From: Obrimoposthia wandeli
Taxonomy: Eukaryota
DNA length: 64,000 nt
Assembly (NCBI GenBank): GCA_977020255.1
Contig: CDROCS010000207.1
Location: 186,001-250,000 of the forward strand
Reading direction: 5' to 3'
The number at the start of each line of letters is the position of its first letter. The stretch's first letter is position 1. The notes beneath the pieces are model-generated. The model did no database searches. It was not told the DNA's origin and was given only the letters and a program-made list of their open reading frames with translations. Positions 42,544 to 60,067 of this stretch are shown piece after piece. The position numbers were made by a program, and so were the translations under genes.

Positions 42544-44110
42544 TACAAATGAATGGTGATATGAGTCAGGTGAATTATGATGCATCCAATATTTGCATAC
42601 ATAAAATCAATAACTGCTGTTTTTGTAGTTTTTGTAGTATTTGTATTACAGTTTTTGTATACTGTATTTGTAGCTATGTATGGTTTCGTACATGATTAAT
42701 TGTGATCTTTATGATCACATTATGAAGCGAAATCATATATAATCTCATAATTATATTTATTTATTATGATATAGTTTTTGTTAGTGATTAATTGTGATCT
42801 GTATGATCACGTTATGAAACAAAAACATCGCAATGGAATGTAATGGAAAGTAAAAAAGAAAATGTAAGTCATTTATTATTTATTAATTTATTTGTAAATA
42901 AAACATCAATCTCCTAAAATATCCTCTTTATCTAGTCTTCTTATAAAAAATTCTTGAATGTGCTTGTAATAATTCTTGAGGTTGGCATACTCTTCTTTTC
43001 CTATTTCTTCACTTATGACTGTCTGCATCGCTTCAATTCTTCCTGATGTTGTCTCTTGCAGTCCAGAACTATTCATCTGCCTTCTTATGTGTGATTTCAG
43101 CTTTGAAAACACTGATTCAATTGGATTGAGGAAGGGACTGTATGGAGGTAGATTAACTATCTTCTTGTTTTCATTAGGTAGAGTTATACCTCTGTGGATT
43201 GAAGCATTATCGTAAATTAAATAGTGCTTCAAATGAGGCTCGAGCTTCTCACAAACCTCCTGAAGAAAAGCAATATATTTTTCTTTATTGAAGGAGCCCT
43301 TCACAATCTTAAAGTGAACGGGTCCGGCCTTTTGAATGGCCAAAACCAGGCTTATGTTAGGTCCTCTGCTGGTGGGAATCATCGAATATAGCCTTTCTCC
43401 TCGTGGTCCCCATCCTCTTTGACTTCTCATCCATATGTTGAAGCCACATTCGTCAATATAAATGCATTGCTTCGTGGTATATTTGCCGGTTTTTCGGTAT
43501 CGGTAAATAATGTTTCTTACGGTGTTGGGCTTTATTCTTAGCATTTTACCGAGCATAACATAATCTTCACCAGCTTCATAGGCTCTTATTAGGTGCGCTT
43601 TATCAGACAGAGGAACCCTGATTAAAACATTAATTAACTTAAAACATCAATAACTTACATTTGAATCCTATTTTCCTTACATGGCATGGTTTCTTCAGAA
43701 TTAAAAGAAAAATTTTCTCTGAAAGGTATTGTATTACTTTCACTGTCGGAGGATACATCTATCCTAAAACATTAATAGACTAAAATAAAAGTTATTAACT
43801 TACAATTCAACGTTATTTGAGGTCCCCGGAACATTAACTTCTTGTAAAATAGCATCACGGTTCATTTTACTTATCACGATTGAAATGAAATTAATTTCTA
43901 TAGTATAAGAAATACATGAAATCACATACAGTACCTTGTCTGTATGTGTATGTGCGTTTCTAAGTTTATATCACCGTTGATTTTACTTATCACGGTTCAT
44001 TTTGAAGTTAGTGTGTGATTCCTATAGTAAGTATTATTTATTTGACCTAAAATTGCATTACTTTATTATAGGAAATTCACAACTATGACTATTATCACCG
44101 TTGAGTTGGA
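42544..44110 (-). mobile_element. IS630/Tc1/mariner-superfamily DNA transposon, ~1.57 kb, with imperfect TIRs
   Basis: Left end caaatgaatggtgatatgagtcaggtgaatt resembles the reverse complement of the right end, caactcaacggtgataatagtcatagttgtgaatt. Encloses the transposase CDS. Confidence 0.7.
42906..43865 (-). CDS. IS630/Tc1-like DDE_3 transposase, spliced model complement(join(42906..43617,43659..43763,43804..43865)), 292 aa
   Basis: Catalytic motifs YIDECG, YDNASIH and LPPYSPFLNPIE. Two gtaagt...ag introns (43618-43658, 43764-43803) link the ORF in frame to an ATG at 43865; total 879 nt with no internal stop. Confidence 0.85.
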
Positions 44111-46656
44111 TTAGGTGTATAAGTATTTTGACAGGATATATTTTTTAAATTTATGACATCTATTTCATTAAATCTATTAAATTATGCACACATTCTGTGC
44201 AGGTGTATTCAATCAATATAATCTGCACTATTTTCATATGCACCAACTTTGTTGTTTTTGTCATCTAAACTTATTCTTTGAAAAATGATTAAAAATACAA
44301 AATGTCATTGTTTTCTTCATTTGATAAACGAATATTCAAAAATGGCAGCCGTTTTATCGGATTCTGCCAATGGAACTTCCTTCAAAATTGAGTTTTTTTA
44401 TTTTACCTATCCATTTTAAGTGAGATTTTTGAAATTATGAATGTTTTTTAGGAGCATCATATTCATTATTTCGATCTCCCAAAAACTATTTATATTGATC
44501 ACAATCATAAGTTGATTTGTGTTTGTGTGTATTGCATGCAATTAATCTATGTAATTATTCATTTAAATTTTTTTTAGATTCAGTCAAGTCATAAAGCTAA
44601 GTAAGGAATTAAGCTCTGCCAATCTGTATGAGGTAATTAGTTATAAATTTAAAATAACTCCTTCATCTATTTTCAGCAAAAATATCAAATATTAAAATCT
44701 ATAATTATTATCATTCAAATTTTTCCTTTTGCTTCTAACCATTGTTGCTATTTTCAGACATACCTTTTCAGATAGTTAATTAGAAATGATTTAAAAGAAT
44801 ATTTAGATACGACTTTTAAAGAATTATATTTTGTTCATTAAATCTGTACACTTTTTAAATTCGTGTCCATTGAATAATTTTGAAAATAACACGGCTTCTT
44901 CATCAACTTTGTATTCAAATTAACATAAAATTACATTGTCTTTATAACCGCTAAAACTGGTCACTCAACACATTTAAACCATAAATTCAATATATCCACC
45001 ATTACAATGTCGTATTGTTCTTTTCATAAAATTATTATATTTTTTATCAAAATCTATCATTCATTATTACAGTAAGAAAAGTCATCAATTTTATTCCATC
45101 ACCTTTATTTCACTAAAAAACAATAATCTTTCAACATGGCTAATATACATTGGCTAATTAATACACAGAAAAATATTTCGCACATACATTTGCTCAACAA
45201 CAAACAAAGCATTATAAAGTGCAACCACACACATAGGGACCTGATTAGCCAATTTGAAATATCAATGAGAATTAATCAGTAACAGTAAATCACACAAAAG
45301 TTATTGTTTCAATTTTTAAACTTCTGTCCACTGTTAACAAACAGAAAGGAAAATTTTAAATAGAAAAACGTATTTTAATAACTGCATTAATGCATACGTT
45401 CTTGTAACATTATAAAAACAGGTTATTCTAGAAGAGTAATTTTTGCATTATTCTAATCTCAAATTTCATCAGTATACCACATGAAAGTTAACATGCTAAT
45501 TTACTAATAATGATTTAAATAAAATGAAGGTTAAATAAGAAGAAAAAATACAAATATTGTTAAAAAATCAGGACAATCAAAATAAATTTATTTTGCACCG
45601 ACATCCAAATTCTGAAAAACAGAATATTTTTGAAAACCACTTTTTTGGATCAAAACTATAATAATAGTAAAATTTGTTATTTAGGATTAAATTACCTTTA
45701 TATTTTAACTGCAAAATGTTATTTCTGAATCTATTGTCAAAAAATTGATCTGCATGAAATATGATATTGATGATATTTAAAAATTTATCTTGTATATCTA
45801 TGATAAATGAAAGTAAATTAATATCAAACATTAATCTAAAATGGATTATAGAATAAACTTAAGTAGGCTACATCATGAAATAAATGTATTTAATATCATT
45901 AATTATCAATCAATTTTATAGATTAAATTATAATTGTATATAAAGCTTATAAATAAAAATATATAATGAAATTAATATATTTGAAGTTAAACAAAAATAA
46001 AACTGGCCACATTTTTTAGATCTAAGAGTAAAGTAAAACGGATAAAAGAACATGTAAATTATATTTTATTCAACATTATGCACAACTTTCAAACGAAAAC
46101 TTTTTTTGTTTGTATTTTAGCCTCAACAATCTCCTAATGGCATTATCAAGTGTATATTCTTTATCTTTACATTCCTCATTTTTACTTCAATTTTGCAACT
46201 GTTGACTGACAAATTGTATTTTTCTTGTTATATCAGATTATTTAATCGTTTTAATTCATCGACAATATTGATGTGGGTTGAAAGTGTTAAATAATTTCAC
46301 TTTCTAATTAATTTAAAATATTAACCGAATTTCTTCGTAATACCATTTCGACTAATTCAAATAGGAAAATATAATTGTATAAGCCAATTAAAATGAATTA
46401 AGGGTATTTTATGCTGCATTCAATGATAAAGTGTACATGTAGAATTTCTGAGCTGTAAAATATTCACCAAGATAAAATTGTTGACTGCATCTCCCCAACC
46501 TCAGCAAGACGACACACTGGCCGCAGCCCAACCAATCACGAAACCCCAACCCGAGATGATAAGGACGACTCTGGTTGGCGGATCACCAAGGCCATAAAAG
46601 CGCGTACGTCGTCAGTGCCAGTGATGTGATGTGACCTCAGTGCAGCCGCCGAGACA

Positions 46657-58720: not shown

Positions 58721-59062
58721 CTTTCTTCGTTGGAGTCACATAATTTAATACAAATCTCGAATGGGTCAGGCTTGGTACGTATAGCTGGAGCTGTGTGATG
58801 AACCCCGTACTATATCTGTTTATAGTGTTTTTTTTTCAAAATAATGAAATTTTTAGATTTCAAGTGATCTTTTATTGAATTAGATGAAATAGTTGAGTTG
58901 AATGCATTTAAAAGCGAATTTGTCTATGAATTTAGAAGCCGATATTAACTTGCAAGAACACCGAGTATCATATAGATAGTAGAATCAAGTATCTGACACT
59001 GAAACATAACCTGTAACATTCCCTCATTGTCACTATTGATTGGAATATATATACGTACACAG

Positions 59063-60067
59063 GCCTTCTGTGTTCCCGTGTCTGCTCTAATTCTCGTTCT
59101 GATCTCCATCGACCGGTTCCTCGTCATCTGCTTTGTGCCATCAATCCTCATCCACCGCTCCACCTCAAAGGTCATCCTGACACTGATATTTCTGCTCGGC
59201 ATCGTCCTCGCCATCCCAATGGCCCTCCACACTGGAGTTCAGCTGCAATTACCGCCACTATTCAACGACAGGCTCATGCAGACTCTAATGCTGAAACCGC
59301 GTCAAACCAACCTGTCCAGTACCTCCTTCCTTCCGCCACCGCGACCGCAGTTACATCAGCCGCCACTGCAGATCTTCACAGTCGGAATATGTACTACAGA
59401 TGAAACCTTCATCAGCAAGAAGAACTATGCCTACTACAAGGTTTCCTTATTTGCCCTATTCACATTTCTGATGCTGCTGATTGTGCTCTTTTACACAATG
59501 ATATTTACCTTCCTCTGGTTCAAGCATCGCAAAATGCGCGTCTATCGGTCCACCAAGAGTACAACTATCCCCGCTGCATCATCCACAACACGCAGCTTCA
59601 TACGCCACAAAAGTGCAACTTCCCACTGTCTGGACGACAGCACGACGTGCACAAACCTGGCCGACAAGACCGTGGTTGTTAACTACCACAATCGCCGACG
59701 TAGACCGCACATTAAGACTGCATACACACTCGGTTTGATCGGCATCACCTTCGTAGTCTCGTACTTGCCCTACTTGCTCATCAGCAACGGCTTCATCTTC
59801 ACGAAGACCAGCAGAGACGTCTTGGCGTTGTCCTCTTCTACCAGCAACTTGAACTCGTCAATTACCGACAACAGCGACCTGAACGATAGCAGTAGCATCG
59901 GTAGAAACAGCTACGGGATCTATCTGGTGTACGTATACAAGCTGCTCTTCTATCTCTACTTCACCAACAGCGTACTCAACCCCATCATATATTCCGTGAC
60001 GAACAATCAGTTCAAGAACGACGTGAAGAAAACCTGGCTATTTCAGATTATTTTTAAACGAAGTTGA
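59063..60067 (+). CDS. Class A (rhodopsin-like) GPCR, exon 2 (TM3-TM7), peptide-receptor-like
   Basis: Acceptor cacag ends at 59062, phase 0. Motifs ILVLISIDRFLVIC (DRF), TM5 LFYTMIF, TM6 FVVSYLPY, TM7 NSVLNPIIYS (NPxxY). Joins exon 1 as CKLIIVLK|AFCVPVSAL, giving 429 aa. Confidence 0.92.
   Translation, partial: AFCVPVSALILVLISIDRFLVICFVPSILIHRSTSKVILTLIFLLGIVLAIPMALHTGVQLQLPPLFNDRLMQTLMLKPRQTNLSSTSFLPPPRPQLHQPPLQIFTVGICTTDETFISKKNYAYYKVSLFALFTFLMLLIVLFYTMIFTFLWFKHRKMRVYRSTKSTTIPAASSTTRSFIRHKSATSHCLDDSTTCTNLADKTVVVNYHNRRRRPHIKTAYTLGLIGITFVVSYLPYLLISNGFIFTKTSRDVLALSSSTSNLNSSITDNSDLNDSSSIGRNSYGIYLVYVYKLLFYLYFTNSVLNPIIYSVTNNQFKNDVKKTWLFQIIFKRS

What the first reader, a model, noticed from the sequence alone, without database searches (positions are those of the whole stretch)
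42906..43865. IS630/Tc1-type transposase with two tiny spliceosomal-type introns
The ORF track shows only 216 aa. Two short introns with gtaagt donors and AG acceptors (43764-43803, 40 bp; 43618-43658, 41 bp) join 62 + 105 + 712 nt in frame to an ATG at 43865, giving a stop-free 292-aa protein with an acidic, Ser-rich N-terminal extension. Two independent phase-2 junctions both restoring frame is unlikely by chance. Tc1/IS630 transposases are usually intronless, so this may be an intron-gaining lineage or a domesticated gene.
Basis: partly seen in the sequence, partly recalled or inferred. Interest (0 to 1): 0.72.

Follow-up and report, generated by a model that had tools for sequence, protein, structure and literature searches.

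The report
Defective copy of intron-bearing Tc1/IS630 transposon
This is a broken copy of a very abundant jumping gene whose transposase gene really does seem to carry two tiny (40- and 41-base) introns near its start. Related jumping-gene families in the same genome share these introns, so it is a mobile element and not a host gene. No RNA data could be obtained to prove the splicing.

Summary
GTAAGT..YAG intervals at 43803-43764 (40 nt) and 43658-43618 (41 nt) join 62 + 105 + 712 nt into an open 292-codon frame. None of 2000 shuffles gave such a solution with strong donors.

- **Not domesticated.** The locus is one copy of a high-copy (about 1000 candidate matches, 96-99% identical) 1.84-kb Tc1/IS630-type transposon with about 37-nt terminal inverted repeats (TIRs) and TA target duplications.
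- **Defective copy.** The window copy (42546-44117, minus strand) has an in-frame 282-bp internal deletion that removes 94 residues, including the second helix-turn-helix (HTH). It also lacks the last 9 nt of the 3' TIR. Full copies encode 386 aa.
- **Introns well supported by comparison.** Eight diverged subfamilies in this genome (29-70% protein identity among the seven compared) place an AG acceptor at exactly the same codon before the first HTH. Six have a plausible GT donor 36-46 nt upstream.
- **Upstream exon codes.** In six subfamilies the junction codon is not ATG, so the upstream exon must be coding. It carries a conserved SD..[PT]FR[ED][NS] peptide.
- **Intron 1.** Its position is shared by three subfamilies. 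One further subfamily has an uninterrupted exon there.

Intron-bearing Tc1-like elements are already known (Tc1, Tc3, TLEWI). The scan flagged the same kind of element on another piece of this genome (s1-198761).

The parts
44118..44119 (.). TA target-site duplication at the 5' end of the element
   Evidence: 15 of 17 complete copies elsewhere are flanked by TA/TA.
44081..44117 (-). 5' terminal inverted repeat (CACCTAATCCAACTCAACGGTGATAAT...)
   Evidence: In the full copy L004 the arms are 584-620 and 2396-2432, 37 nt, 78% complementary. The window sequence is identical to other copies here.
43854..44107 (-). Subterminal direct repeats of the TIR core (AAC[CG]GTGATA...). They are candidate transposase-binding sites. 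The innermost one overlaps the ATG at 43865.
   Evidence: the repeat finder families D2 (43969-43983, 43988-44002, 44093-44107) and D4 (43854-43881 against 43970-43997). Their function is inferred.
43804..43865 (-). Exon 1, 62 nt, from the ATG: MNRDAILQEVNVPGTSNNVE plus 2 nt
   Evidence: The ATG and the open frame are kept in 24 of 24 copies that have a complete 5' region.
43764..43803 (-). Intron 1, 40 nt, GTAAGT..TTTTAG, phase 2
   Evidence: The acceptor lies four codons before the conserved 'SD' in subfamilies B (L129 888-926, 39 nt) and D as well. One subfamily (L142) has no intron here and reads through with a homologous peptide.
43659..43763 (-). Exon 2, 105 nt: IDVSSDSESNTIPFRENFSFNSEETMPCKENRIQ. 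It carries the conserved SD..[PT]FR[ED][NS] module.
43618..43658 (-). Intron 2, 41 nt, GTAAGT..AATCAG, phase 2. It splits an AT|G codon that lies where relatives have their start Met.
   Evidence: An AG acceptor sits at the identical codon position in 8 subfamilies.
42906..43617 (-). Exon 3 of the window copy: HTH1, the deletion scar, the DDE_3 catalytic domain and the TGA stop
   Evidence: Full copies have 330 codons here and the window has 236.
43477..43478 (-). Junction of a 282-bp (94-codon) in-frame internal deletion with 2-nt microhomology (AC). It removes TQGPRGG...EEKW, that is HTH2 and the linker.
43452..43454 (-). First catalytic Asp (YIDECGF)
   Evidence: Invariant column D149 in alignment A1. 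DDE_3 match.
43209..43211 (-). Second catalytic Asp (DNASIH)
   Evidence: Invariant D230 in A1.
43116..43118 (-). Catalytic Glu (NPIESVF). There are 30 residues between D and E, so the signature is DD30E.
   Evidence: Invariant E261 in A1. The spacing was counted.
42684..42828 (-). Two 53-nt subterminal repeats, each holding the palindrome GTGATCA.A.AGATCAC, in the 3' non-coding part
   Evidence: the repeat finder family D1.
42546..42582 (-). Remnant of the 3' TIR. The terminal 9 nt (AGTCAGGTG) and the flanking TA are missing or replaced.
   Evidence: One search compared with L004 2396-2429.

Best explanation
**What the locus is.** Window 42546-44117 (minus strand) is a dead deletion derivative of a recently active, high-copy cut-and-paste DNA transposon of the IS630/Tc1/mariner superfamily. 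The family has about 37-nt TIRs, TA duplications and a DD30E catalytic triad.

**Gene structure in autonomous copies (1825-1872 bp).**
- The transposase gene has three exons of 62, 105 and 994 nt, encoding 386 aa.
- They are separated by two phase-2 spliceosomal introns of 40 and 41 nt, each with a perfect GTAAGT donor.

**Why splicing is obligatory.**
- The unspliced RNA stops inside intron 1 (GTA AGT TAA).
- With intron 2 retained it stops at ATG TAA.
- The first in-frame ATG of exon 3 lies inside HTH1.
- A DNA-binding transposase can therefore be made only from spliced mRNA.

**What the small exons encode.** Exons 1 and 2 add about 55 acidic, Ser-rich residues with a conserved SD..[PT]FR[ED][NS] motif in front of the paired-like HTH.

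**Defects of the window copy.** It lost 282 bp in frame, probably through abortive gap repair after excision (this step is inferred). This removed the second HTH, and the copy also lost the tip of its 3' TIR. It can neither make an active transposase nor, probably, be mobilised.

**Shown:** the anatomy, the copy number, the TIR and TSD, the deletion, and the conservation of intron positions and of the exon-2 peptide.

**Inferred:** actual splicing, which AUG is used, the function of the N-terminal module, and the origin of the deletion.
For: **Family and mobility**
- Pfam DDE_3 2.7e-26, NCBIfam IS630 7.8e-43, and a match to the SB100X catalytic domain.
- The DNA search gave 1002 candidates, of which the 40 scored were mostly 98-99% identical.
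- 15 of 17 complete copies are flanked by TA/TA in unrelated flanks. TIRs.
- 17 of 27 copies keep an intact 330-codon exon 3.
- 24 of 24 copies with a complete 5' region keep the ATG, both open exons, both GTAAGT donors and both acceptors.

**Introns**
- No ATG lies between the upstream stop and HTH1.
- The junction ATG sits where intron-less relatives start: M plus about 5-10 residues, then DK.
- Shuffle test: 0 of 2000.
- Eight subfamilies place an AG acceptor at the same codon. The seven whose exon-3 proteins were compared are all open and 29-70% identical.
- Six subfamilies have a plausible donor 36-46 nt upstream (GTAAGT, GTATAT, GTAAGT, GTAAAT, GTAACA, GTAATT). Two further elements have weak donors (GTCATA, GTTTGT) at 41 and 40 nt.
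- The junction codon is ATA, GTC, AAA, TCG or AAG in other subfamilies, so their start must lie in the upstream exon.
- Exon-2 peptides align from acceptor to donor, with S5, D6, T11, F14 and R15 invariant.
- L142's uninterrupted first exon is collinear with exon 1 plus exon 2 of subfamily B.
- A host proteasome gene has a 38-nt GTAAAT..TAG intron.

**Deletion**
-.
Against:
- Within-family copies are too alike (96-99%) to show selection on exons 1-2. The one older copy (C373) shows equal change in exons and introns and has lost the exon-1 ATG.
- Exon 1 of this family has no recognisable similarity to exon 1 of the other subfamilies. Its ATG lies inside a repeated TIR-core motif, so it could be fortuitous.
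- Host introns measured in CCT genes are longer, 69-586 nt. Many host genes are intronless. The claim that 40 nt is the host's modal intron size is therefore not established.
- For subfamily F the donor is ambiguous (65 nt or 40 nt).
Confidence: 0.8

Rival explanations
1. Both introns are real, but in this family exons 1-2 are only a 5' leader. Translation would start at the AUG that splicing of intron 2 creates (AT|G). That gives a canonical 331-aa transposase (MVPLSDK...) with no N-terminal extension, or 237 aa from the window copy.
For: - The junction ATG lies exactly where intron-less relatives have their start Met.
- It has A at -3 and G at +4.
- The exon-1 ATG is part of a repeated TIR-core motif.
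- Exon 1 is not similar to the other subfamilies' exon 1.
- Subfamily F may also form AT|G.
Against: - In six other subfamilies the junction codon is not ATG, so the upstream exon must code.
- The exon-2 peptide of this family keeps the conserved SD..PFREN motif in frame.
- A 56-codon open frame through two junctions is rare by chance.
- Under ribosome scanning the upstream AUGs at 43865 and in exon 2 would be met first.
Confidence: 0.15
2. The GT..AG intervals are chance features of a decayed 5' region. The element would make only the 216-aa (window) or 310-aa (full copy) protein from the internal ATG at 43556, or no protein at all.
For: - No RNA evidence is available.
- AT-rich sequence offers many GT and AG dinucleotides. 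With any GT allowed, 1.75% of shuffles give a comparable solution.
Against: - The internal ATG cuts HTH1 in half.
- The family is young and abundant with many intact ORFs, so it needs a working transposase.
- The donors are perfect GTAAGT (0 of 2000 shuffles).
- Acceptor position and phase are conserved in 8 subfamilies down to about 30% protein identity.
Confidence: 0.03
3. The locus is a domesticated, host-co-opted transposase gene that acquired introns, like the TLEWI genes of bivalves.
For: - It has introns and an extra N-terminal domain, features typical of co-opted transposases (bioRxiv 10.1101/656579).
Against: - There are about 1000 candidate copies at 96-99% identity.
- Copies have TIRs and TA duplications in unrelated flanks.
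- The window copy is internally deleted and end-truncated.
- Many copies have independent frameshifts and stops.
Confidence: 0.02

Closest known systems
Tc1 and Tc3 of Caenorhabditis elegans (Tc1/mariner superfamily)
   Same: They are cut-and-paste elements with TIRs, TA duplication and an HTH plus DDE transposase. [quoted passage not shown]
   Different: - Tc1 is DD34E and this family is DD30E.
- This protein scores far better against the IS630 model (147 bits) than against Sleeping Beauty (E 0.003).
- There are two introns here. Both lie ahead of HTH1, one splits the start-equivalent codon, and there is a conserved N-terminal extension.
- Whether the Tc1 intron position is homologous was not tested.
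TLEWI, Tc1-like elements with introns of pteriomorph bivalves (bioRxiv 10.1101/656579)
   Same: They are IS630/Tc1/mariner transposase genes interrupted by GT-AG introns, with the same exon-intron structure in different copies.
   Different: TLEWI are DD36E, low-copy, lack TIRs, have 2-5 introns spread through the gene, and are proposed to be domesticated. The present family is DD30E and high-copy, has TIRs and TA duplications, and has two tiny introns confined to the 5' end.
Bacterial IS630 family transposases (NCBIfam NF033545)
   Same: This is the best curated-model match, over positions 2-280 of 299, at 147 bits against a cut-off of 100. It shares the HTH plus DDE_3 architecture and TA target.
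   Different: The present element is eukaryotic, has spliceosomal introns and an N-terminal extension, and lives in an animal genome.
Drosophila P element (splicing-controlled transposase)
   Same: By analogy only: an active transposase requires removal of introns by the host spliceosome, so transposition can be gated by splicing (Laski et al. 1986, as cited in 10.1101/656579).
   Different: It belongs to a different superfamily. Regulated or tissue-specific splicing is not shown here.

Membership tests
IS630/Tc1/mariner superfamily | DDE/D catalytic triad in an RNase-H-like domain | tested here: met
   DDE_3 8.6e-27 and 2.7e-26. D149, D230 and E261 are invariant in alignment A1. IS630 model at 147 bits.
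IS630/Tc1/mariner superfamily | TA target-site duplication | tested here: met
   15 of 17 complete copies are flanked by TA/TA. The window copy has TA at 44119-44118 on its 5' side only.
IS630/Tc1/mariner superfamily | Terminal inverted repeats | tested here: met
   37-nt arms, 78% complementary, in L004. The 3' arm of the window copy lacks its last 9 nt.
IS630/Tc1/mariner superfamily | N-terminal bipartite (paired-like) HTH DNA-binding domain | tested here: inconclusive
   There are only sub-threshold Pfam hits: HTH_23, HTH_SB, HTH_32, HTH_33, HTH_Tnp_Tc3_2 and PAX. They lie at the expected places. The window copy lacks the second HTH.
Tc1 family sensu stricto (DD34E) | 34 residues between the second D and the E | tested here: not met
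   There are 30 residues between them, so DD30E. No paper in the library uses the term 'DD30E'.
TLEWI (Tc1-like elements with introns) | DD36E signature, low copy number, no TIRs | tested here: not met
   The family is DD30E, has about 1000 candidate copies, and has TIRs. TLEWI definition from 10.1101/656579.
Spliceosomal intron | GT...AG boundaries with donor and branch-like signals | tested here: met
   Both introns are GTAAGT...YAG with TTAAT about 7-11 nt upstream of the acceptor. All 24 copies with a complete 5' region keep them.
Spliceosomal intron | Position and phase conserved among diverged homologues while the intron sequence is not | tested here: met
   Intron 2: the acceptor is at the same codon in 8 subfamilies. 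Intron 1: same position in 3 subfamilies and absent in one.
Spliceosomal intron | Removed from the RNA | not testable with these tools
Spliceosomal intron | Length within the host's intron range | tested here: inconclusive
   One host proteasome gene has a 38-nt intron. CCT genes have introns of 69-586 nt. Many host genes are intronless. The sample is too small to give a mode.
Domesticated transposase gene | Single or low copy, immobile (no TIR or TSD), conserved as a host gene | tested here: not met

The most novel reading that the evidence does not exclude
These elements form an undescribed, old clade of IS630-like 'DD30E' transposons whose gene structure has been inherited through family diversification. 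That structure is two start-proximal introns, one of them at the start-codon position, plus a conserved acidic N-terminal SD..PFREN module. The read-through 'R[VIL]S' N-termini of the closest metagenomic relatives suggest the clade also exists in other organisms. The introns would make transposase production strictly dependent on, and possibly regulated by, host splicing, for example germline-restricted as in the P element. The N-terminal module would be a new regulatory domain.
Probability: 0.3. Interest if true: 0.6.

Novelty: new variant of a known kind. Interest (0 to 1): 0.4.

Why it matters
- **Gene callers will miss the real protein.** Without the two 40-nt introns they report only a truncated 216-310-aa ORF that starts inside the DNA-binding domain.
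- **Introns can persist in active DNA transposons.** It is a clear comparative case that spliceosomal introns are inherited, gained (the HTH1 intron in subfamily G) and lost or absent (intron 1 in L142) inside actively transposing elements, not only in domesticated ones. That bears on how mobile elements depend on, or exploit, host splicing.
- **The copies suit experiments.** The family has many apparently intact copies, so genomic and cDNA versions could be compared directly.
- **The locus itself is ordinary.** It is a dead deletion derivative.

Tried and rejected
1. **A third intron.** In the first full copy I read (L004) the frame broke at GGTAAGC...CAG, which suggested a third 42- or 53-nt intron. 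Comparing 28 copies showed that L004 alone has A4 instead of A5 there. Exon 3 is continuous, so there is no third intron in this family.
3. **DNA of the closest protein relatives (P0003, P0005, P0007, P0008).** The single metagenome scan returned only relatives at about 30% identity. The shared intron in those organisms therefore rests only on their read-through N-termini.
4. **Selection within the family.** The copies are too similar. The 87%-identical C373 copy shows equal decay in exons and introns.
5. **Host modal intron size.** Tubulin, dynein, CCT and proteasome searches showed mostly intronless genes or introns of 69-586 nt. Only one clear 38-nt host intron was found.
6. **Organism identity.** PSMB5 gives only 65-69% identity to bivalves, annelids and cnidarians. 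Rfam found nothing in the window.
7. **The joined spliced model.** It was deliberately not assembled, translated as one piece or searched. Junction-spanning patterns were not searched either. All work was done exon by exon, by reference.

Full report
**Observation**

- An ATG lies at 43865.
- 62 nt of open frame follow, then GTAAGT...TTTTAG (43803-43764, 40 nt).
- 105 nt of open frame follow, then GTAAGT...AATCAG (43658-43618, 41 nt).
- 712 nt follow, ending in TGA at 42908-42906.

I translated each exon by reference in its own frame and read the two junction codons by eye (tt|g and at|g).

Exon 3 carries a DDE_3 domain (8.6e-27) and a weak helix-turn-helix (HTH) match. Upstream of exon 3 the frame is closed by a TGA at 43649-43647 and has no ATG before 43556. 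The plain 216-aa ORF therefore starts in the middle of the first HTH.

In 2000 dinucleotide-preserving shuffles of the 320 nt upstream, none gave an ATG-initiated two-intron extension of 55 or more codons with donors matching GTAAGT at 5 of 6 positions or better. 1.75% did when any GT was allowed.

**What the locus is**

The genome is 1.35 Gb in 6912 contigs and about 29% G+C. It belongs to a metazoan with no close sequenced relative: PSMB5 is only 65-69% identical to bivalve, annelid and cnidarian proteins.

A DNA search of the whole genome with the element found 1002 candidates. The 40 that were scored are mostly 98-99% identical. Every copy except the window's carries about 280 more bases between query positions 617 and 624.

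Complete copies have these features:
- They are 1825-1872 bp long.
- They begin CACCTAATCC... and end ...GAGTCAGGTG, with 37-nt arms that are 78% complementary.
- 15 of 17 are flanked by TA on both sides in unrelated flanking DNA.

The transposase matches NCBIfam's IS630 model at 147 bits against a cut-off of 100. It matches the Sleeping Beauty catalytic domain only weakly. The catalytic residues are invariant in an alignment with 13 relatives (D149, D230, E261). The second D and the E are separated by 30 residues, giving DD30E.

This is a young, abundant IS630/Tc1/mariner transposon and not a domesticated gene.

**The window copy is defective**

Compared with full copies it lacks 282 bp (94 codons, in frame, 2-nt microhomology) at 43478/43477. 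The deletion removes TQGPRGG...EEKW, which is the second HTH and the linker. Its 3' TIR stops 9 nt short of the end, at 42546.

Autonomous copies would encode 386 aa from exons of 62, 105 and 994 nt.

Of 27 copies examined, 17 keep an intact 330-codon exon 3. All 24 with a complete 5' region keep the ATG, both small exons open, both GTAAGT donors and both acceptors.

A tempting third intron in the first full copy I read (L004) turned out to be a private 1-nt deletion in an A5 run.

**Are the introns real?**

Within-family comparison has no power because the copies are 96-99% alike. One older copy shows equal decay in exons and introns.

The decisive evidence is comparative, from this same genome. 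A protein search with a 45%-identical relative revealed further subfamilies. I fetched representatives and compared seven exon-3 proteins: this family plus L129, L135, L133, L132, L136 and L140. All seven are open, 329-341 aa long, and 29-70% identical to one another. They are 33-54% identical to this family.

*Intron 2*
- In all seven, and in an eighth subfamily (L137 and L142), an AG acceptor lies at exactly the same place. It is followed by 1 nt, a V/I/L codon and then the conserved ..DK.. motif of HTH1.
- Plausible GT donors lie 36-46 nt upstream: GTAAGT 41, GTATAT 42, GTAAGT 42, GTAAAT 42, GTAACA 46, GTAATT 36.
- Two elements have weak donors: L140 (GTCATA, 41 nt) and L142 (GTTTGT, 40 nt).
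- In one subfamily (F, L136) the donor is ambiguous.
- The junction codon is ATG in this family but ATA, GTC, AAA, TCG or AAG in others. Those transposases can only start in the upstream exon.

*Exon 2*
- The exon-2 peptides of this family and of subfamilies B and D align from acceptor to donor, with S5, D6, T11, F14 and R15 invariant (SD..[PT]FR[ED][NS]).
- The intron sequences are unrelated.

*Intron 1*
- Its acceptor lies four codons before that SD in all three subfamilies, in phase 2 each time.
- Subfamily member L142 has no intron there. Its single 113-nt first exon (MYENLSNISSVESERTLPFRSN...PKSRQ) is collinear with exon 1 plus exon 2 of subfamily B.
- This natural "intron-less" version supports the predicted junction.

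*Further points*
- Subfamily G has an extra 42-nt phase-2 intron inside HTH1 (L137 1236-1277), so introns have been gained or lost within the clade.
- The closest relatives outside this genome (45-52% identity, all from metagenomes) either start at an internal Met or read through as ...[FIY]R[VIL]S..DK. That is what a YAG|G acceptor at the same place would give. This is an inference, because their DNA could not be fetched.

**Host introns**

- A host proteasome gene has a clear 38-nt GTAAAT..TAG intron.
- CCT genes have introns of 69-586 nt.
- Most proteasome, tubulin and CCT genes are intronless.
- Tiny introns exist in host genes, but I cannot say that 40 nt is the mode.

**How it most likely works**

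Transcription from the left end yields a pre-mRNA that cannot encode a DNA-binding transposase.
- Intron 1 holds an in-frame TAA right after the donor.
- Intron 2 turns the start-equivalent codon into ATG TAA.
- The next ATG lies inside HTH1.

Removal of both introns gives a 386-aa protein: an acidic, Ser-rich N-terminal module, a paired-like bipartite HTH, and a DD30E catalytic domain. This protein would bind the TIR and the subterminal AAC[CG]GTGATA repeats and carry out TA-targeted cut-and-paste.

The anatomy and the conservation are shown. Splicing itself, the AUG used, the role of the N-terminal module and the binding sites are inferred.

The main open alternative (about 15%) is that in this family exons 1-2 are a leader and translation starts at the junction AUG.

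**Comparison with what is known**

The rule that Tc1/mariner genes lack introns (PMC4120734) has known exceptions.
- Tc1 and Tc3 contain introns (PMC6829131).
- The TLEWI elements of bivalves have 2-5 introns, but they are DD36E, low-copy and TIR-less (bioRxiv 10.1101/656579).

The present clade differs in four ways. It is high-copy and mobile-looking. It is IS630-like with DD30E spacing, a term found in no paper of the library. Its two introns are confined to the 5' end. It has a conserved N-terminal extension.

I rate it a new variant of a known kind, of moderate interest to transposon specialists. The window locus itself is an ordinary dead copy. Another (s1-204538) reports 39/40-nt host introns and the absence of RNA data.

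Noticed in passing
L137:1236-1277 (G000:C2872) and L142 (G000:C4468): A sister subfamily of the same transposon clade has an additional 42-nt phase-2 intron inside the first HTH (..NVVYR|YKKNG..). L142 lacks intron 1 altogether and has one continuous 113-nt first exon.
   Followed up: partly
L136 and L140 (G000:C2537:86824-87819 and 89942-90964, both minus strand): Two intact transposase genes of the clade, 70% identical to each other, lie 3 kb apart on the same strand.
   Followed up: no
G000 genome-wide: There are large families of intronless housekeeping-type genes: about 25 intronless CCT-like ORFs of about 550 aa, more than 150 tubulin-domain matches, and most proteasome subunits without introns in the domain. 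The same genome also has introns of 38 nt up to several kb.
   Followed up: partly
L126 (G000:C2330:141200-142500, minus strand): A host proteasome beta-subunit gene has a 38-nt GTAAAT...TTGTAG intron between ..IERLHK and INSSCVLGYSGD... A possible 42-nt GTAAGT intron follows the next exon but was not verified.
   Followed up: partly
window 59027-60067 (+): A 346-aa single-exon ORF matches the rhodopsin-family GPCR domain (7tm_1, 4.9e-12). It is probably a host gene.
   Followed up: no
window 43623-43673 and 43765-43818: The 3' halves of introns 1 and 2 and the adjoining donor regions resemble each other (TTAATGTTTTA..; families D3 at 72% and D6 at 86%). This could reflect shared branch-point and polypyrimidine constraints, or duplication of one intron.
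   Followed up: no
I did not examine it.
   Followed up: no
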